This document shows, piece after piece, positions 1 to 6,960 of a stretch of 64,000 bases of DNA (position 1 is the stretch's first letter; each line of letters begins with the position of its first letter). This DNA is from Thecamonas trahens ATCC 50062 (taxonomy: Eukaryota > Protista > Apusomonadida). Position numbers and translations under genes: made by a program. The stretch is taken from contig NW_013657621.1 of assembly GCF_000142905.1 (NCBI RefSeq), forward strand, positions 1 through 64,000, written 5' to 3'. Below the pieces are notes generated by a model. It was not told the origin of the DNA, made no database searches, and was given only the letters and a program-made list of their open reading frames with translations.

Positions 1-1628
1 TCATGGGCTGGGCAAACAACAAGCCGACCACGCTCCGTCCACCGCAGCCGTGCGGCAGCCTGGGCATCACCGCCCTGGCAGTCGATGCAACGTCGTCGTT
101 CTTCGTCAAGAGCGCGCTGCGGTTCCAGCTCGCCATCAAGCTAACAGCGGAAGCAACAACGCCCTGCCCTGCTCCGCCCAGACGAATGGGACATCCGGTT
201 GCTCGACGACAGCGAGCACATGCCATCACCCCTCCACAGACTCGTTGCCAGATCGCGCACGCTCTCACCACATCCATGCCTCAGTCGGACACCAGCCATC
301 CCCTCTCCCATCGCCACACCCGAGCCACACATGCCGCGCCAGCTCCCAGCCAACGAGCACACGGCCCACACACACACGCGTGTGCTGGACATCCTCTCCA
401 GCCCGATCTACCACCTCACCCTCGCCTCGGCCTCCAATCCCCTCCTCAGCCACCCATCCAACGCCCCCAAGACCAACGCTAAAAAGCCAACCACAAACGA
501 TCCCGATCCCATGGGCCTCACCTCCCCCGAGTCGGACGACCGCAGATCCCTCGTTGGCGAGCTGGCTGCCATGAACCCCCACTGTGCACTCAACAAAGCT
601 GATGCCCGCATTCCATCGCCATCTCAACTTGCATACGACTGGCCGATCGCTCCCTCACCCTGGCCACTGGTCGGCCACGGCCGCGGTTCTCGATGCATCC
701 ACCAACTTGAGCAAGGTGCACGACCCGCCGATGGCAATCAACGCCTTGCTAGTGATGTTCTTGTCGTTTGGGCAGCCACCAACCTTGATCGCCACAAGGT
801 CGCGGCGCTTGTACGCCACCGCAGCCACAACGACGTCGGCCGTCTGATTGCTACCGCGCCAAACGCCGTAGACGCTTTTGGAGAAGGTAACGGCCGGGCT
901 CTCCGGAAGCGTCTCCAGCGCATCCTCGATCGAGTCAACAAAGCTGAGGTCAGCATAAGATTCAAAGTCCATGATGGTTGTCAGCGCAGTTGTGCATGTA
1001 CGTACGGAGGCCGTGAACGTCGGCGAGCTGTGGTTCTCGCCACATCGCAGAGAAGGAACCGAACAAGGTGAGACTCAGCAATGCAATCACCTCTATCCCA
1101 CTCACAGATCAGAGCCCACTCACAGCCGCAACACGCCGGAAGCAGCCACATCTTGCCTCAATCACCCGATCGCCATCTCCTGGCCGGAACCCATTCTGCG
1201 ACCGCTCTGCACCCTCGCCCTCCACCACATGACTACCACGCACACTCTAATACATCGAATGCGTTCATCCTATGCTGAAAATACCCGATCCCGTCTCGCT
1301 CTCGGAAGTCAAGCAGCATGAGGCTTGGTTAGTACTGTGGTGGGGGACCACACGGGAATACCGAGTAACGCATTCTATTTTCTTTTTGCCCAACTGCACA
1401 CCCTCCTTGCCTGCATGCACCCCCGCTGACCCCACCATCGCCACATCAATCATTTCTCGTTCGATTAATCATGCCTAACCCCATCAATTAACTCTCATTG
1501 AAATAATCATACCTTCTCCCCCGGCCCTTCCCCCGGCACTCGCCCGATATCCGAAAAATCGCCCAAACGCCGCCTGTCGCCCTCGCCGTCACACTCACCG
1601 CACACTCCGCACACCTCTCACTGTGCCC

Positions 1629-4600
1629 ATGGACCCCGCTCCAGGGGGCACATGTGACCCCCCGCGCCCTGCACACACACCAGTGCAGCAGGGTACTGCC
1701 AAGCGCCCTCGCCCGCTGCTCACCGCCAACGCCAGCAGGGTCAGCTCGGCCACCCCTTCCTCCGCAGTCCCCCAGAACATGCATATCGAAGCGACGTCAT
1801 CGTCACCAGCCGGGCCGTCCTCCACCAAGTCATACGATGTCTTCCTCTGCCACGGCTCCAACGACAAGGGGCTCATGCTCTCGCTCCGCGACAAGCTCGT
1901 TGCCCTCGGTCTGCGCGTCTTTCTCGACATCAAGTCGCTCGACGCCATGATTGTCCAAGATCCCGCAGACTGCGCCCGGCTTGCCCGTGACTCACACGTT
2001 GTGGTCGTCGTTGTCTCAAAGTACTCAATCGTCACACGGTGGGCCATCGCAGAGGCCAACGCAGCCCTCGCTGATCCGACTTGCAAGGTCTTTCCGGTTT
2101 TTGCCGACGCTGAGCTCTCGCTCGAGACCGTCTCGTCGCCGGCATGGCGTGACGGCCCGCGGGATGCCAGCCACCCTCTACTGGCGTACATGGCGGCGGC
2201 TTTCCCGCCGCAGATCCCGAACAACCGTCGATTCACGGATCTCTGGGAACACGATGAACTCACGCCCGAGCTCAAAGTCGCCCGCATCGGCACTCTCTAC
2301 GCCCTCCTCGAGCGCGGCCTCGCTCCGTACTCCCCGGCTCGCGACAGCGTGGTTGACATGGTCGACGATCTTGCCGACCGCATCCAGGCCATTGTTCCCA
2401 GTTCACCCCTCCGCCCCTCGCCCATGCCGCCGCCACCTAACCCATCTGAGTACTACCCGCTCCCTGACACTCGTGATGCGGTCATTAATGTCCTTCTTGG
2501 TGCGAACAACGTCTCAGTCGTCGGTGTCAACGGGCTCGGTGGCGTCGGCAAGTCGTCACTCGCTGCCGATGTCGCCATCCACCCCGCCATCACCTCGGTC
2601 TTCTCCGTCTTCTGGCTCCCTCTCGGTGAGGACAAGACATCTCCCATCGCCATTGCCAGCCGCATGTCCTACTTCCTGAAGCAAGGCCTCGGTTGCGCAA
2701 TCGATGCACAAGCTGGCCTCAATGACCTCCAACCCATTCTTGCTGCCAAGACCCGGGCCCTCGCCGCCGCCGGCACCCGCATCCTGCTCATCCTCGACGA
2801 CGCGTGGACCACCCGCCAGGCCTCCGTCTTCACCAACCACATCGCAGCCCCGCATGCCGTCCTCGTCACCTCGCGTAACGCCGCTGTTGCTACCAACTCC
2901 GCCTCCTCCATCGAGCTTGGTACCTTTGCCCCGGACGACGCTGCTGTTGTCCTTCGCAACTACCTCGCCAAGGGCTCACCTGAGTGGGCAATCACCCTTG
3001 CTCTCAACGATTCCCGCATCGTCTCCCTCGCGACCTTTTGCCGTGGCCATGCCCTCGCCCTCGCCGTCCTTGGCTCGTCCATTTCTGGCGAGGCTGCGCT
3101 TGACGCCGCTGTTGAGGACGCTGCAGATGCAACTGAGCTTGCCATGGATGAGCACCGCGATGATTGCGGCGGATCGGACGCCAAGTACGCCCACATCTTT
3201 GACATCATCACTTGGACCCTCGGCGGTGCCATCCCCGAGCGTGTTCGCAAGGTGGCGCTGGCTATTTACGCCATGCTCGCCGTCTTTCCATCAGACGCGC
3301 CCATCGACGTCGCCAACTTCCGCTCCGCGATCGACGCAAGCAATATCAAGTTTGCTTGGGCCCTCGATGCCCTCGCCAACACGTCGTTGCTGCGCGTCGT
3401 TGCCACGGATGGCGGCGCCATAACCGTAATCGAGATGCACGATCTGCACCTCGAGTACATTCGCCATCGGCTTGAGGTGTGCTTTGACGACATCCCTTCC
3501 CTTGCTGCCCGTCACCTCGCCGCTGTCGCCGGGGTGCCTCCGCCTGGCGCCACGCCAGAGTCCGCTAGGGTGGCAATGACCTCTGGCACTGCCTCCGATT
3601 GGATCGTCACCCGCGGTATTTCACACATGATTGCAGCCGGAGCGAACCTTGCTGCCGTTGCGGTTGCTCTCTCCTGGCCGTGGATGAAAGCCCGCGCAAA
3701 CGACTCGCTTGGTGGCCTCCTCCATGATCTGCGTTGTGTTGTGCGCCTCGGCCGTGAAGTAGCCAAAGACGTTGACGAGGTCGAGCGTGCGCTGTCGCTC
3801 TCACGCGAGATCATTGAGAGCGGTACGTCACACATCGAAACCGAGCTCGTTGCCCGACTTGCCTATGACAACGCGTCCAACGCCGTGAAGGACCTGGTTG
3901 CTGCTGTGCGCGAAGATGTCCCGTCTAAGGCTCTCATTCCATCGAGAGCCGTGGACCCTGTCGCGCATCGTGGCGCTGAGCGCTTTCGCTTTGATGGCTC
4001 GTCCGGCAATGTCATCAACATCGGTGGCTCGCTGGTTGCTGGTGGATGTGGGAAGAATGTGGACGTACTTGACGTGCAAACTGGTGAACGCGTGGAGGTG
4101 CTGGAGGGCCACACCAGCGATGTGAATGGTGTGATTGCGCTGCCGAGTACGGATGGCCAGCTGCCTGTCCTGGTCTCGTGGTCGGACGACGACACGATCC
4201 GGGTGTGGCATGCTGCGGACGACGGGATGGGCGCCATGCGGTACACCGCGGACAGTGCATTCTGTGAGGTGCTGGAGGGCCACACCAAGTATGTGCAGGG
4301 TGTGATTGCGCTGCCGAGTGCGGATGGCCAGCTGCCGGTCCTGGTCTCGTGGTCGGAGGACAAGACGATCCGGGTGTGGCCTGCGGACGACGGGACGGGC
4401 GCCATGCGGTACACTGCGGACACTGTCGCCTGTGAGATGCTGGAGGGCCACACCAGCAGGGTGCGGGGTGTGATTGCGCTGCCGAGTGCGGACAGCCAGC
4501 TGCCGGTCCTGGTCTCGTGGTCGTGGGACAACACGATCCGTGTGTGGCATGCTGCGGACGACGGGATGGGGATCATGCGGTACACCGCGGACAGGGCCTC

Positions 4601-6491
4601 CTGTGAGGTGCTGAAGGGTCACACCGGCAATGTGCAGGGTGTGATTGCGCTGCCGAGTGCGGATGGCCAGCTGCCTGTCCTGGTCTCGTGGTCGTGGGAC
4701 AACAACACGATTCGGGTGTGGCATCCTGCGGACAACGGGACGGGCGCCATGCGATACACCGTGGACAGTGCGTCCTGTGAGGTGCTGGAGGGCCACACCA
4801 GCGGTGTGAATGGTGTGATTGCGCTGCCGAGTGCGGATGGCCAGCTGCCTGTCCTGGTCTCGTGGTCGTTCGACGGGACGATCCGGGTGTGGCATCCTGC
4901 GGACGACGGGACGGGCGCCATGCGGTACACCGCGGACAGTGCCTCCTGTGAGGTGCTGGAGGGCGACACCGGCGATGTGCATGGTGTGATTGCGCTGCCG
5001 AGTGCGGACAGCCAGCTGCCCGTCCTGGTCTCGTGGTCGTGGGACAACACGATCCGGGTGTGGCATGCTGCGGACGACGGGACGGGCGCCATGCGGTACA
5101 CCGCGGACAGTGCATTCTGTGAGGTGCTAGAGGGCAACACCAGCGATGTGCATGGTGTGATTGCGCTGCCGAGTGCGGATGGCCAGCTGCCGGTCCTGGT
5201 TTCGTGGTCTGGCGGATTTCGGAACACAGACAACACGATCCGGGTGTGGCATCCTGCGGACGACGGGACGGGCGCCATGCGGTACACCGCGGACAGTTCC
5301 TCCTGTGAGGTGCTAGAGGGCAACACCAGCGATGTGCATGGTGTGATTGCGCTGCCGAGTGCGGATGGCCAGCTGCCTCTCCTCGTCTCGTGGTCGAGAG
5401 ACAGGACGATCCGGGTGTGGCATCCTGTGGACGACGAGATGGGCGCCATGCGGTACACCGCGGACAGTGCCTCCTGTGAGGTGCTGGAGGGCCACACCAG
5501 CTGGGTGCATGGTGTGATTGCGCTGCCGAGTGCGGATGGCCAGCTGCCTGTCCTGGTCTCGTGGTCGGAAGACAAGACGATCCGGGTGTGGCATGCTGCG
5601 GACGACGGGACGGGCGCCATGCGATACACCGTGGACAGTGTCTCCTGTGAGGTGCTGGAGGGCCATACCAGCGGTGTGCGGGGTGTGATTGCGTTGCCGA
5701 GTGCGGATGGCCAGCTGCCTGTCCTGGTCTCGTGGTCGGTCAACGGGACGATCCGGGTGTGGCATCCTGCGGACGACGGGACGGGCGCCATGCGGTACAC
5801 CGCGGACAGTGCATTCTGTGAGGTGCTAGAGGGCCACACCAGCGGTGTGCGGGGTGTGATTGCGTTGCCGAGTGCGGATGGCCAGCTGCCTGTCCTGGTC
5901 TCGTGGTCGGCCGACGGGACGATCCGGGTGTGGCATCCTGCGGACGACGGGACGGGCGCCATGCGGTACACCGCGGACAGTGCATTCTGTGAGGTGCTAG
6001 AGGGCCACACCGACGATGTGTGGGGTGTGATTGCGCTGCCGAATGCGGATGGCCAGCTGCCTGTCCTGGTCTCGTGGTCGTGGGACAACACGATCCGGGT
6101 GTGGCATGCTGCGGACGACGGGACGGGCGCCATGCGGTACACCGCGGACAGTGCATTCTGTGAGGTGCTAGAGGGCCACACCGACGATGTGGAGGGTGTG
6201 ATTGCGCTGCCGAGTGCGGATGGCCAGCTGCCGGTCCTGGTCTCCCAATCATACCCTGACGAGACGTTCGAGTGGCACCCCTCCCCCACCGGCTACGCCC
6301 TCCACGCCCGCCACCCTTCCTCCTTCTGGCTCCACGCCCGCCGCTCCACCTCCACCCACCCACGCAACAACTCCACCCGCATCATCATTGCCAACCACAC
6401 CGGCCTCTCCACCCCCCACCCCTCCGACCCCAACCGCCTCCTCGCTGTCGTCTCCAACCGCCCCCCCATCATCCTCCGCCGCCACCCATAA
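1629..6491 (+). CDS. NLR-like STAND protein: TIR + NB-ARC + WD40 repeats (~1620 aa)
   Basis: TIR motifs YDVFLCHGSNDK, LRVFLD, VVVVSKYSIVTRWAIAE and VFPVF. NB-ARC motifs: P-loop GLGGVGKS (~2532-2555), Walker B LLILDDAW, VLVTSRN, GLPL-like CRGHALAL, MHD (3435-3443). Followed by 13 GH..WD-type repeats. The ATG at 1629 was preferred over the GTG at 1623. Confidence 0.95.
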   Translation: MDPAPGGTCDPPRPAHTPVQQGTAKRPRPLLTANASRVSSATPSSAVPQNMHIEATSSSPAGPSSTKSYDVFLCHGSNDKGLMLSLRDKLVALGLRVFLDIKSLDAMIVQDPADCARLARDSHVVVVVVSKYSIVTRWAIAEANAALADPTCKVFPVFADAELSLETVSSPAWRDGPRDASHPLLAYMAAAFPPQIPNNRRFTDLWEHDELTPELKVARIGTLYALLERGLAPYSPARDSVVDMVDDLADRIQAIVPSSPLRPSPMPPPPNPSEYYPLPDTRDAVINVLLGANNVSVVGVNGLGGVGKSSLAADVAIHPAITSVFSVFWLPLGEDKTSPIAIASRMSYFLKQGLGCAIDAQAGLNDLQPILAAKTRALAAAGTRILLILDDAWTTRQASVFTNHIAAPHAVLVTSRNAAVATNSASSIELGTFAPDDAAVVLRNYLAKGSPEWAITLALNDSRIVSLATFCRGHALALAVLGSSISGEAALDAAVEDAADATELAMDEHRDDCGGSDAKYAHIFDIITWTLGGAIPERVRKVALAIYAMLAVFPSDAPIDVANFRSAIDASNIKFAWALDALANTSLLRVVATDGGAITVIEMHDLHLEYIRHRLEVCFDDIPSLAARHLAAVAGVPPPGATPESARVAMTSGTASDWIVTRGISHMIAAGANLAAVAVALSWPWMKARANDSLGGLLHDLRCVVRLGREVAKDVDEVERALSLSREIIESGTSHIETELVARLAYDNASNAVKDLVAAVREDVPSKALIPSRAVDPVAHRGAERFRFDGSSGNVINIGGSLVAGGCGKNVDVLDVQTGERVEVLEGHTSDVNGVIALPSTDGQLPVLVSWSDDDTIRVWHAADDGMGAMRYTADSAFCEVLEGHTKYVQGVIALPSADGQLPVLVSWSEDKTIRVWPADDGTGAMRYTADTVACEMLEGHTSRVRGVIALPSADSQLPVLVSWSWDNTIRVWHAADDGMGIMRYTADRASCEVLKGHTGNVQGVIALPSADGQLPVLVSWSWDNNTIRVWHPADNGTGAMRYTVDSASCEVLEGHTSGVNGVIALPSADGQLPVLVSWSFDGTIRVWHPADDGTGAMRYTADSASCEVLEGDTGDVHGVIALPSADSQLPVLVSWSWDNTIRVWHAADDGTGAMRYTADSAFCEVLEGNTSDVHGVIALPSADGQLPVLVSWSGGFRNTDNTIRVWHPADDGTGAMRYTADSSSCEVLEGNTSDVHGVIALPSADGQLPLLVSWSRDRTIRVWHPVDDEMGAMRYTADSASCEVLEGHTSWVHGVIALPSADGQLPVLVSWSEDKTIRVWHAADDGTGAMRYTVDSVSCEVLEGHTSGVRGVIALPSADGQLPVLVSWSVNGTIRVWHPADDGTGAMRYTADSAFCEVLEGHTSGVRGVIALPSADGQLPVLVSWSADGTIRVWHPADDGTGAMRYTADSAFCEVLEGHTDDVWGVIALPNADGQLPVLVSWSWDNTIRVWHAADDGTGAMRYTADSAFCEVLEGHTDDVEGVIALPSADGQLPVLVSQSYPDETFEWHPSPTGYALHARHPSSFWLHARRSTSTHPRNNSTRIIIANHTGLSTPHPSDPNRLLAVVSNRPPIILRRHP
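4095..6245 (+). repeat. Intragenic tandem array of 171-bp (57-aa) WD40 units, 12 complete plus 1 partial
   Basis: Unit EVLEGHTxxVxGVIALPSADGQLPVLVSWSxDxTIRVWHxADDGTGAMRYTADSAxC recurs; the first two units start at 4095 and 4266. DNA is near-identical outside a few codons. Confidence 0.97.
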
Positions 6492-6684
6492 CACCCCTCA
6501 CACTCCCACCGCATTTACTCCCCTGAGCACCGCGCCCGCATCCTCGCCGCTGCCAGCACATCCGCGGCCTCCTGCGCCATGGGCCTCACCAGCGGATCGA
6601 CCGACCAACGCCGCCGGATGAATCACCCGCCATCGCACTAGCAGCGTTGCTGATGAGGACCTGGCGGCCAACCTCCAGTGTTGC

Positions 6685-6960
6685 TGTCGTCAAACAGAGG
6701 AGCGTGCCAAAGGTGAACATGCCAGCCTCAAAACCTCCTCATCGGCTCCGCGCAGCTGCTCTGGTGTCATGTACGCCACCGATACCATCACCGTCATCAT
6801 CTCCTGACTGTCGTCATGGCGTTGAGCCCGTTGTTGAGGAGGACCACCCACCCGCTCTCGTGGACCACTGCCACCTCACGCGGCTTGAGCGAGCCGTTCC
6901 TGGCACCAGTGATCGCGTTGGCCTCGGAGAGGCAGAGCGCCAGCACTCGATGCCCACGCT
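6685..6960 (-). pseudogene. Decayed protein kinase fragment (subdomains VIb-IX)
   Basis: Across shifting frames: GSLKPREVAVVHESGWVVLLNNGL (~HRDLKPxN..DFGL), VAYMTPEQLRG (~YMAPE), GMFTFGTLLC (~DVFSFG). Catalytic Asp residues are lost, and stops and frameshifts are present. Confidence 0.55.

What the first reader, a model, noticed from the sequence alone, without database searches (positions are those of the whole stretch)
4095..6245. NLR sensor array: near-identical WD40 DNA repeats with hypervariable ligand-face codons
Seen: 13 units of 171 bp are almost identical, including silent sites, but about five codons vary radically. The two after GHT read SD,KY,SR,GN,SG,GD,SD,SD,SW,SG,SG,DD,DD. The one after the next V reads N,Q,R,Q,N,H,H,H,H,R,R,W,E. 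The pair flanking the WD Asp reads D-D,E-K,W-N,W-N,F-G,W-N,insert,R-R,E-K,V-G,A-G,W-N. Established: these positions lie on the top binding face of WD40 propellers, and the same pattern (concerted evolution plus diversifying selection) characterises fungal HNWD receptors such as Podospora HET-E/HET-D, which use NACHT rather than NB-ARC. Inference: a protist TIR-NB-ARC receptor generates recognition diversity by repeat shuffling, i.e. a variable non-self/pathogen sensor. The 13 units plus a degenerate flanking blade would fit a double 7-blade propeller.
Basis: partly seen in the sequence, partly recalled or inferred. Interest (0 to 1): 0.9.

Follow-up and report, generated by a model that had tools for sequence, protein, structure and literature searches.

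The report
Hypervariable WD40 sensor array, protist NLR
A gene of the marine flagellate Thecamonas trahens joins a TIR "executioner" domain and an NB-ARC switch to 13 near-identical WD40 repeats that differ almost only at five ligand-face codons, and it belongs to a family of about 18 such genes sharing one repeat pool: the diversification pattern known from fungal non-self-recognition genes, seen here in a single-celled relative of animals and fungi.

Summary
Window 1629-6491 (+) is one open frame: TIR_2, NB-ARC (Walker A, Walker B and MHD present), a degenerate blade, then 13 tandem 171-bp WD40 units (4095-6244).

The units are 94.6% identical outside five codons and 50% identical inside them. 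The organism is Thecamonas trahens ATCC 50062, and the gene is annotated only as "WD repeat protein".

The same unit occurs about 180 times at roughly 18 loci. In 104 clean units, codons 8, 9, 11, 31 and 33 carry 8-13 different residues each. Their nonsynonymous diversity is 0.56, against 0.075 for synonymous sites elsewhere in the unit. Counting on a tree gives dN/dS of 3-7 at these codons.

By the model's strands and a published sequence rule, these codons are the WD40 top-face hotspots R1-2, R1 and D-1 plus their neighbours. They match the selected pairs in Podospora HET-E/D.

Units are as alike between loci as within one locus, show no positional orthology, and are internally recombined, so the family shares one pool.

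Still inferred:
- the function as an immune or non-self sensor;
- the order of units in this 2010 assembly;
- the 7+7 blade split;
- the C-terminus.

The scan found the same pattern earlier on another copy in this genome (s1-740947). No close relative was found outside this organism, and no paper held here describes the family.

The parts
1257..1376 (+). 5S rRNA gene, about 250 bp upstream of the start codon. It is part of the block that is duplicated together with the gene.
   Evidence: Rfam RF00001: 104.9 bits, full length. The upstream 1.6 kb is 89-96% identical at the paralogous loci. The genome has at least 24 5S copies, about ten of them in this position.
1629..6491 (+). Uninterrupted open frame of 1620 codons (TIR, NB-ARC, WD40 array, tail). 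The public model starts at 1779 and ends differently.
   Evidence: ORF list and translation. The MDPAPG start is conserved in paralogues. P0001 is 100% identical over residues 51-1537.
1839..2117 (+). TIR domain. The glutamate of the W-x-x-x-E motif is invariant in all paralogue versions.
   Evidence: Pfam TIR_2: 39.2 bits (cut-off 28), residues 71-163. E142 is invariant in alignment A1.
1826..2423 (+). Cassette-like stretch (TIR and what follows) that some paralogues replace with two other, very divergent TIR versions.
   Evidence: blastn aligns coding nt 1-197 and 795-2466 but not 198-794 for C22, C97, C125 and C67. Protein alignment. Unitig loose ends at 1811-1813 and a joint 1811>2423.
2472..3092 (+). 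NB-ARC nucleotide-binding switch. Walker A GLGGVGKS is at 2532-2555, followed by Walker B LLILDD. The MHD motif is at 3435-3443.
   Evidence: Pfam NB-ARC: 52.1 bits (cut-off 23.5). Motifs read directly from the translation.
3984..4094 (+). Degenerate first blade (FRFDGSSGNVINIGG...GERV) preceding the array.
   Evidence: Translation. The model predicts strands B, C and D here, at low confidence.
4095..6244 (+). Array of 13 WD40 units of 57 residues (171 bp). The last keeps only its first 83 bp. The hypervariable codons are numbers 8, 9, 11, 31 and 33 of each unit.
6239..6527 (+). Either an intron (public annotation, GT..AG) or the start of a read-through tail that would complete blade 14 (ETFEWH as strand C). 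Unresolved.
   Evidence: Tail of P0001 mapped. No reading-frame signal: pN is about equal to pS in all three frames. The donor GT is absent in 4 paralogues. AlphaFold builds strands C and D from the read-through tail.
6528..6641 (+). Annotated last exon (37 codons plus stop).
   Evidence: Pooled pN/pS is 0.40 in the annotated frame, against 1.31 and 0.81 in the other two frames. Weak support.

Best explanation
This is one member of a Thecamonas trahens family of STAND/NLR-type intracellular receptors.

Proposed mechanism. The WD40 propellers bind a ligand through their top face. Binding releases the NB-ARC switch (ADP to ATP, then oligomerisation). The clustered TIR domains then act as the effector, most likely an NAD+-consuming or signal-making enzyme that stops or kills the infected cell.

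How diversity arises. Recognition diversity comes from a genome-wide pool of about 150-180 near-identical 57-residue repeat units. These units are exchanged within and between about 18 loci by unequal crossing-over and short-tract gene conversion. Diversifying selection acts on five top-face positions per blade.

Shown here:
- the domain architecture;
- the shared unit pool;
- the lack of positional orthology between arrays;
- recombination inside units;
- the excess of nonsynonymous change at the five codons, and their placement in the D-A loop and the B-C turn.

Inferred:
- ligand binding;
- the activation mechanism;
- TIR enzymology;
- the immune role.
For: Architecture. Pfam finds TIR_2, NB-ARC and WD40, all above their cut-offs. 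Walker A, Walker B and MHD are read from the sequence. The TIR glutamate is invariant across three divergent TIR versions.

Family. The 171-bp unit matches 109 places at about 18 loci, at 85-94% identity. nhmmer finds 180 unit hits.

Diversifying selection.
- In 104 clean units from 17 loci, codons 8, 9, 11, 31 and 33 carry 8-13 residues each (2.6-3.2 bits). Together they hold 44% of all amino-acid entropy.
- piN at these codons is 0.56, against piS 0.075 and piN 0.055 elsewhere in the unit.
- Nucleotide diversity is 0.52 at these codons, against 0.068 at the third positions of other codons.
- Tree-based counts give dN/dS of 3.2, 4.7, 7.1, 6.2 and 4.4.
- The 104 units show 89 distinct five-residue combinations.

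Shared pool.
- Scaffold-site divergence is 5.5% within loci and 6.1% between loci.
- The closest paralogue (C64, 97.3% identical in the NOD region) shows no diagonal of unit identity; values are 86-94%.
- The same in-frame indel variants recur at different loci.
- 76 of 231 site pairs show all four gametes, Rm is at least 7 within 171 bp, and r2 is about 0.01 beyond 15 bp.
- Arrays have 7 to 16 units.

Structure.
- The AlphaFold models (pLDDT 64.6 and 73.2, pTM 0.59 and 0.72) give the regular D-A-B-C strand pattern.
- V10-x11-G12-V13 fits the bulge rule, which makes codon 11 the R1 position, codon 9 R1-2 and codon 31 D-1 (PMC3419727).
- Podospora HNWD genes show the same two pairs flanking a conserved residue, in the D-A loop and the B-C turn (PMC1805685).
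- The best structure match is the highly repetitive 14-blade Nostoc propeller 2ymu, followed by double propellers including Apaf-1.
Against: - There is no experimental or expression evidence. No RNA run of the organism was found.
- Unit order in the array rests on a 2010 assembly. Arrays with such high internal conservation are known to misassemble (PMC12222747). The public runs gave only unitigs of 70-716 bp.
- Most paralogues carry at least one frameshift or an unread gap in this assembly. Part of the family may therefore be pseudogenes.
- The NOD regions of the paralogues are themselves only 4-16% diverged at silent sites. The family could be young rather than homogenised, and concerted evolution cannot be separated cleanly from recent duplication.
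- Recombination violates the tree used for the counts.
- The models are of moderate confidence, and I had no coordinates with which to measure exposure.
Confidence: 0.7

Rival explanations
1. The same molecular machine, but used for recognising other Thecamonas cells (allorecognition, mating or kin discrimination), as het-e and het-d are in Podospora, rather than for sensing pathogens.
For: The only experimentally characterised system with this exact evolutionary signature, HNWD, is an allorecognition system (PMC1805685; PMC4986451). The sequence signature cannot distinguish between the two kinds of target.
Against: T. trahens is a solitary gliding flagellate, and I know of no cell fusion in it (my own knowledge, not tested). 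Fungal authors themselves regard allorecognition as a side effect of immune NLRs (PMC4986451).
Confidence: 0.1
2. A young, partly decaying tandem amplification. On this view the five codons vary simply because they are structurally free, and nothing selects for diversity.
For: Scaffold sites are only weakly constrained (piN/piS 0.73). Global dN/dS is 0.98. Many copies carry frameshifts or gaps. The silent divergence of the whole family is low.
Against: Neutral sites cannot exceed the silent rate. The five codons show 3-7 times the global synonymous rate. Their nucleotide diversity is 0.52, against 0.068 at third positions and about 0.15-0.2 divergence in the downstream flank. Conserved scaffold residues (H6, S28, D32, W38, the DHSW tetrad) are kept in nearly all units.
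Confidence: 0.07
3. Assembly artefact. Reads from many paralogous arrays were merged, so this particular 13-unit array (number and order of units) does not exist as such.
For: The assembly dates from 2010. About 18 loci share units. Most loci lie at contig ends. High-internal-conservation repeats are known to be unreliable in non-long-read assemblies (PMC12222747). One bin (5644-5824) had no unitig at 98% or better in three of the four runs and almost none (0.97) in the fourth.
Against: Units differ by about 9% on average, and 96 of 104 are unique, which is enough to anchor reads of several hundred bases. The frame is intact over 1620 codons. Pieces at least 98% identical occur in an independent 2020 sample and in marine and estuary metagenomes, in 22-29 of 30 bins. 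The pooled-unit statistics do not depend on unit order.
Confidence: 0.08
4. A non-immune Apaf-1-like or scaffold function (for example developmental or stress-induced cell death), with the WD40 face binding an endogenous partner.
For: NB-ARC followed by a double WD40 propeller is the Apaf-1 layout. Apaf-1 is among the structure matches.
Against: An endogenous ligand would select for constancy. It would not give 89 different five-residue faces in 104 blades, or arrays of 7-16 units. There is no CARD domain; TIR takes its place.
Confidence: 0.05

Closest known systems
Podospora anserina HNWD/NWD genes (het-e, het-d, het-r): HET-NACHT-WD40
   Same: - WD40 arrays of near-identical units shared by a multigene family.
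- Repeat-number variation.
- Unit exchange within and between loci.
- Positive selection on two pairs of codons that flank a conserved residue, in the D-A loop and the B-C turn (codons 7/9 and 25/27 there; 9/11 and 31/33 here).
- Many distinct residue combinations (55 in 69 units there; 89 in 104 here) (PMC1805685).
   Different: - NB-ARC instead of NACHT, and TIR instead of HET (said to be remotely TIR-like, PMC4986451).
- Units of 57 residues instead of 42, with a 15-residue C-D insertion as in RACK1 blades.
- A fifth variable codon (8), and an extra selected site (54).
- A unicellular apusomonad host.
- No RIP is known here.
- Loci lie at contig ends, each with a 5S rRNA gene upstream.
Highly repetitive WD40 proteins of prokaryotes and lower eukaryotes (Hu et al. 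2017; Nostoc propeller PDB 2ymu)
   Same: Internal repeat identity is above 0.7. The conserved DHSW tetrad is present. Diversity is concentrated at the predicted hotspot sites (PMC5587647). 2ymu is the best structure match (E 6.7e-28, 28% identity).
   Different: That work is a catalogue. It neither names this family nor shows a multi-locus unit pool or site-wise selection. No Thecamonas entry was found in its two supplements held here.
Plant TIR-NB-ARC-LRR receptors (TNLs) and bacterial TIR-STAND defence proteins
   Same: An N-terminal TIR with the conserved glutamate, an NB-ARC with P-loop and MHD, and a C-terminal repeat sensor. The nearest non-family sequences are metagenomic TIR-NB-ARC proteins with LRR, TPR or FGE-sulfatase ends (E 1e-35 to 1e-15).
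   Different: The sensor is WD40, not LRR. Identity to these relatives is only about 30%. No orthology is shown.
Apaf-1 (CARD-NB-ARC-WD40 double propeller)
   Same: An NB-ARC followed by about 14-15 WD40 blades in two propellers. It appears among the structure matches.
   Different: Apaf-1 has a CARD effector, ancient diverged blades, a single conserved ligand (cytochrome c) and a single gene.

Membership tests
STAND / NLR-like NTPase of the NB-ARC (AP-ATPase) type | NB-ARC domain above the family threshold, with Walker A, Walker B and an MHD-type motif | tested here: met
   Pfam PF00931: 52.1 bits against a cut-off of 23.5. GLGGVGKS, LLILDD and MHD are read in the translation.
STAND / NLR-like NTPase of the NB-ARC (AP-ATPase) type | Three-part layout: N-terminal effector, central NOD, C-terminal superstructure-forming repeats | tested here: met
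   TIR_2 at residues 73-165, NB-ARC at 284-490, WD40 from about residue 790 in the numbering (frame from 1623), all in one open frame.
TIR domain with enzymatic potential | TIR fold match and a conserved catalytic glutamate | tested here: inconclusive
   TIR_2 scores 37-39 bits (cut-off 28). The glutamate is invariant in three divergent paralogue TIRs. That it is the catalytic residue rests on motif resemblance recalled from plant and bacterial TIRs. No activity was tested.
WD40 beta-propeller | WD40 repeat profile, four strands per blade, DHSW tetrad residues | tested here: met
   PF00400: 153 bits. DSSP shows four strands per unit. H6, S28/S30, D32 and W38 are nearly invariant in 104 units.
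NLRs with high internal repeat conservation (Dyrka et al. 2014: at least 85% identity over at least 100 residues) | Repeat units about 85% or more identical at protein level over 100 residues or more | tested here: met
   Mean pairwise protein identity of the nine gap-free units is 84.9% across about 740 residues. DNA identity is 90.7%. Borderline on the mean; many pairs are higher.
Podospora HNWD family (het-e/d/r) | HET effector domain | tested here: not met
   No HET hit at E up to 0.01. TIR_2 is found instead.
Podospora HNWD family (het-e/d/r) | NACHT nucleotide-binding domain | tested here: not met
   NB-ARC matches, not NACHT.
Podospora HNWD family (het-e/d/r) | Concerted evolution of units across family members, plus positive selection at top-face codons | tested here: met
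   This is the 'works like' criterion, not evidence of descent.
Plant TNL | LRR sensor domain | tested here: not met
   No LRR family appears in the Pfam scan. WD40 takes its place.
Apaf-1/CED-4 apoptosome proteins | CARD effector | tested here: not met
   No CARD hit.

The most novel reading that the evidence does not exclude
The roughly 18 loci lie near contig ends and possibly near chromosome ends. Most are interrupted in this assembly. They could form a donor library from which short gene-conversion tracts continually rewrite the few intact, expressed receptors. Swapping of whole TIR cassettes would be a second layer. This would be a fast, clonally heritable receptor-diversification system in a unicellular eukaryote. 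It would be nearer in logic to VSG or VLR cassette copying than to ordinary germline NLR evolution.
Probability: 0.12. Interest if true: 0.85.

Novelty: new variant of a known kind. Interest (0 to 1): 0.62.

Why it matters
NLR-type receptors whose sensor repeats are homogenised yet hypervariable at the binding face have been worked out experimentally only in filamentous fungi. There their presence was linked to multicellularity (PMC4986451).

Finding the same evolutionary device in an apusomonad has two consequences. It is built from different parts (TIR and NB-ARC instead of HET and NACHT, with a 57-residue blade), and the host is a solitary flagellate on the branch next to animals and fungi. 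So this way of making recognition diversity is either old or easily reinvented, and it does not need a multicellular body.

The family also offers a small, defined test case of about 18 genes with five codons per blade. It could be used to ask what a free-living protist's intracellular immune receptors recognise, and whether TIR-based cell suicide operates in this part of the eukaryotic tree.

Tried and rejected
- Read laying on 1300-6700 with four runs (the source sample, a 2020 sample, and two metagenomes) gave only unitigs of 70-716 bp. It shows that the unit sequences exist elsewhere but cannot test unit order or strain polymorphism.
- No RNA run of the organism was offered, so neither expression nor the 3' splice could be tested.
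TTAGGG arrays exist on C1 and C2 but not on any contig end that I read next to a family member. 'Subtelomeric' is therefore not established.
- C-terminus: codon-frame statistics could not decide between the annotated intron and a read-through tail.
- Blade number per propeller: Foldseek and VIA-align matched 6-, 7- and 8-bladed rings about equally (TM 0.4-0.58). Only the break near the unit 6/7 boundary favours 7+7.
- Relatives outside T. trahens. A search with five units found only the organism's own proteins, and then generic WD40 proteins at 38-40% identity. The NOD search found only about 30%-identical TIR-NB-ARC proteins. The gene context of the best one (P0015) did not tell whether it is bacterial or eukaryotic.
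- Targeted mutagenesis of the DGR type was considered and set aside. All three positions of the variable codons and all four bases vary, not adenines only. I did not search for a reverse transcriptase.
- The twelve units first scored as 170 bp: eleven were artefacts of hit boundaries and the twelfth was an unread terminal base, not frameshifts. True frameshifts inside units are few, and one sits in a G-run.
- Literature: no paper held in the library links Thecamonas or apusomonads with NB-ARC, NLR or TIR proteins.
Full report
**What is in the sequence**

Tandem Repeats Finder reports a single array at 4095-6244: period 171, 12.5 copies, 88% matches. The repeat finder gives 13 copies spaced 168-186 bp apart.

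The array lies inside one open frame, 1623-6491 on the + strand. Translated, this frame reads as a TIR domain, an NB-ARC domain and then WD40 repeats. Pfam confirms all three:

| Domain | Score (bits) | Cut-off (bits) |
|---|---|---|
| TIR_2 | 37 | 28 |
| NB-ARC | 52.1 | 23.5 |
| WD40 | 153 | 27 |

There is no NACHT, HET, CARD or LRR match. The P-loop GLGGVGKS, the Walker B LLILDD and an MHD motif can be read directly in the translation.

Nine units have 57 codons. Three carry in-frame length changes. The thirteenth keeps the repeat for only 83 bp. The gap-free units are 90.7% identical in DNA: 94.6% outside five codons and 50.2% inside them.

**Organism and family**

The protein is 100% identical to a 'WD repeat protein' of Thecamonas trahens ATCC 50062, an apusomonad. 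All other close matches are proteins of the same strain.

Searching the organism's own 28.7-Mb assembly with two units gave 109 matches at about 18 further places, at 85-94% identity, plus one diverged copy at 78%. A profile search of the fetched loci found 180 unit hits in arrays of 7 to 16 units.

Each locus repeats the whole block:
- about 1.6 kb upstream, including a 5S rRNA gene;
- the TIR-NB-ARC part, at 89-97% DNA identity;
- the array;
- about 0.6 kb downstream.

All 16 loci on larger contigs lie within about 16 kb of a contig end, with the gene's 5' end facing that end. None of the ends I read carries TTAGGG repeats, although other contigs do. Whether the family is subtelomeric, or the assembler simply stopped at a repeated block, stays open.

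**Is the variation concentrated, and is it selected?**

From 17 loci I took 104 units of exactly 171 bp with no N and no stop codon; 96 of them are unique.

- Codons 8, 9, 11, 31 and 33 carry 8-13 different residues each (2.6-3.2 bits). Every other codon but one stays below 1.3 bits; the exception is codon 54, at 1.7 bits.
- The five codons hold 44% of all amino-acid entropy.
- Nonsynonymous diversity at the five codons is 0.56. Elsewhere in the unit, synonymous diversity is 0.075 and nonsynonymous diversity 0.055.
- Nucleotide diversity is 0.52 at the five codons and 0.068 at the third positions of the other codons.
- A counting method on a FastTree of the 96 unique units (parsimony states, Nei-Gojobori paths) gives dN/dS, against the global synonymous rate, of 3.2, 4.7, 7.1, 6.2 and 4.4. 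The p-values run from 7e-9 to 2e-35. Weaker signals appear at codons 54, 40 and 55.

Recombination violates the tree, but the tree-free diversities say the same thing. Simple relaxation of constraint would give ratios near 1, not 3-7.

**Where the five codons lie**

AlphaFold2 without an alignment gave a moderate model of the whole WD region (pLDDT 64.6, pTM 0.59). It gave a better one of units 7-13 (pLDDT 73.2, pTM 0.72).

Both models show the same pattern in every unit:
- strand D: unit positions 56-57 plus positions 1-4 of the next unit;
- strand A: positions 10-16;
- strand B: positions 25-30;
- strand C: positions 34-39;
- a 15-residue excursion between strands C and D.

So codons 8 and 9 are in the D-A loop, codon 11 is the second residue of strand A, and codons 31 and 33 flank the Asp of the B-C turn.

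Wu et al. 2012 define the top-face hotspots from sequence. R1 is the residue after the first V/L/I of the strand-A bulge (V-R1-R2-V). R1-2 lies two residues before it. D-1 precedes the tetrad Asp (PMC3419727). Here V10-x11-G12-V13 and x31-D32 make codons 11, 9 and 31 exactly these three positions. Codons 8 and 33 are their neighbours.

Paoletti et al. 2007 found the same geometry in Podospora. There, codons 7/9 and 25/27 each flank a conserved residue, in the D-A loop and the B-C turn, on the interaction face (PMC1805685).

I had no coordinates, so exposure was not measured directly.

**Shared pool and shuffling**

- At scaffold sites, units differ by 5.5% within a locus and 6.1% between loci. 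Only 27 of 104 units have their nearest neighbour in the same locus.
- The closest paralogue (contig C64) is 97.3% identical in the NOD region. Its units are only 86-94% identical to ours and show no diagonal.
- Blocks of several units in the same order are shared between some loci (C101/C97, C79/C22, C73/C123).
- The same in-frame indel variants recur at different loci: one extra Asn after the WD Asp, loss of His39, a five-residue insert, and a six-residue deletion.
- Inside the unit, 76 of 231 pairs of biallelic sites show all four gametes, at least seven recombination events are needed within 171 bp, and linkage vanishes beyond 15 bp.
- 22 of the 27 recurring first-half motifs pair with more than one second-half motif.

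One caveat applies. Silent divergence of the NOD regions between paralogues is only 0.04-0.16. The family as a whole is therefore young or homogenised, and 'concerted evolution' cannot be told cleanly from recent duplication followed by shuffling.

**Blade count**

One degenerate blade plus 13 units makes 14 blades. The best Foldseek match for the full model is the 14-blade, highly repetitive Nostoc propeller 2ymu. It is followed by double propellers, Apaf-1 among them.

In the second-look alignment, single propellers align either to model residues about 10-384 or to about 385-790. That split corresponds to blade 0 plus units 1-6, and units 7-13. This fits 7+7. However, TM-scores of the half model do not separate 7-bladed from 8-bladed rings, and other family members have 8 to 17 blades.

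**Relatives and literature**

An exhaustive profile-free search with the TIR-NB-ARC part found the following beyond the family:
- other T. trahens TIR proteins, including TKL kinases with a C-terminal TIR;
- metagenomic TIR-NB-ARC proteins with LRR, TPR or sulfatase-modifying ends, at about 30% identity.

A search with five units found no 57-residue unit outside this organism.

No paper held here connects Thecamonas or apusomonads with NLR, NB-ARC or TIR proteins. Hu et al. 2017 noted in general that highly repetitive WD40 proteins of prokaryotes, fungi and protists are diverse at hotspot sites (PMC5587647). The scan itself reported the same pattern on another copy in this genome (s1-740947).

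**Limits**

- Unit order rests on a 2010 assembly, and such arrays are known to misassemble (PMC12222747). The public runs are held only as short unitigs. These match 22-29 of 30 bins at 98% or better, in an independent 2020 sample and in marine and estuary metagenomes, but they span no array.
- Expression is untested.
- The C-terminus is unresolved. The public model splices out 6239-6527. The read-through frame would complete blade 14, and AlphaFold folds it as strands. But this stretch shows no frame signal, the donor GT is missing in four paralogues, and the annotated last exon shows only weak constraint.

**Verdict**

This is a real and well-supported feature. It is an NLR-like TIR-NB-ARC-WD40 receptor whose sensor array follows the fungal HNWD pattern of homogenised repeats with a selected, hypervariable binding face. 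It sits within a multi-locus family in a unicellular eukaryote.

It is not a member of the HNWD family, because the HET and NACHT domains are absent. It works like that family. I class it as a new variant of a known kind.

Noticed in passing
window 1257-1376 (+): A full-length 5S rRNA gene sits about 250 bp upstream of the receptor's start codon, on the same strand. The genome has at least 24 dispersed 5S copies, 20 of them with identical scores. About ten sit in this same position upstream of family members, so roughly two fifths of the 5S genes travel with this gene family.
   Followed up: partly
window 1826-2423 (+); L043, L034, L047, L036: The TIR region exists in three very divergent versions among the paralogues, about 30-40% identical to one another. 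It lies between a leader and an NB-ARC that are over 90% identical, like a swapped cassette. The conserved glutamate is kept in all versions. Unitigs from wild metagenomes break at exactly these borders.
   Followed up: partly
contigs C17, C22, C23, C35, C38, C39, C49, C57, C59, C64, C67 (both ends), C70, C71, C73, C79: All 16 family loci on larger contigs lie within about 16 kb of a contig end, with the gene's 5' end facing that end. None of the ends read has TTAGGG repeats, while contigs C1 and C2 start with them. This could mean a subtelomeric family, or assembly breaks at a repeated block.
   Followed up: partly
window 6239-6641 (+): The gene's end is ambiguous. The public model removes 6239-6527 as an intron and adds a 37-codon exon. 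The uninterrupted frame instead runs to 6491 and would supply the missing strands of the last blade. Paralogue comparison does not decide between the two.
   Followed up: yes
unit codon 54 (for example window 4254-4256 in unit 1): A sixth site has excess nonsynonymous change (dN/dS 3.2, six residues). It lies at the end of the 15-residue C-D insertion, away from the canonical top-face positions. Codon 40 is an Ala/Pro dimorphism.
   Followed up: no
window units 2, 4 and 7 (4266, 4605, 5121) and loci on C64, C67, C79, C22, C35: The same in-frame length variants of the unit recur at different loci: one extra Asn after the WD Asp, loss of His39, a five-residue GGFRN insert, and a six-residue deletion in the A-B loop.
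   Followed up: yes
proteins P0016-P0019 (other T. trahens genes): The same kind of TIR domain is also fused to the C-terminus of ankyrin-repeat TKL kinases. It also occurs in TIR-NB-ARC proteins without WD40 in this organism.
   Followed up: no
runs X5, X10, X13-X15 (coded): Estuary and marine metagenomes from 2015-2025 hold 26-40% of the stretch's 31-mers, and two of them that were laid give pieces at least 98% identical to this gene. The organism or a very close relative, with the same repeat units, therefore occurs in the wild.
   Followed up: partly
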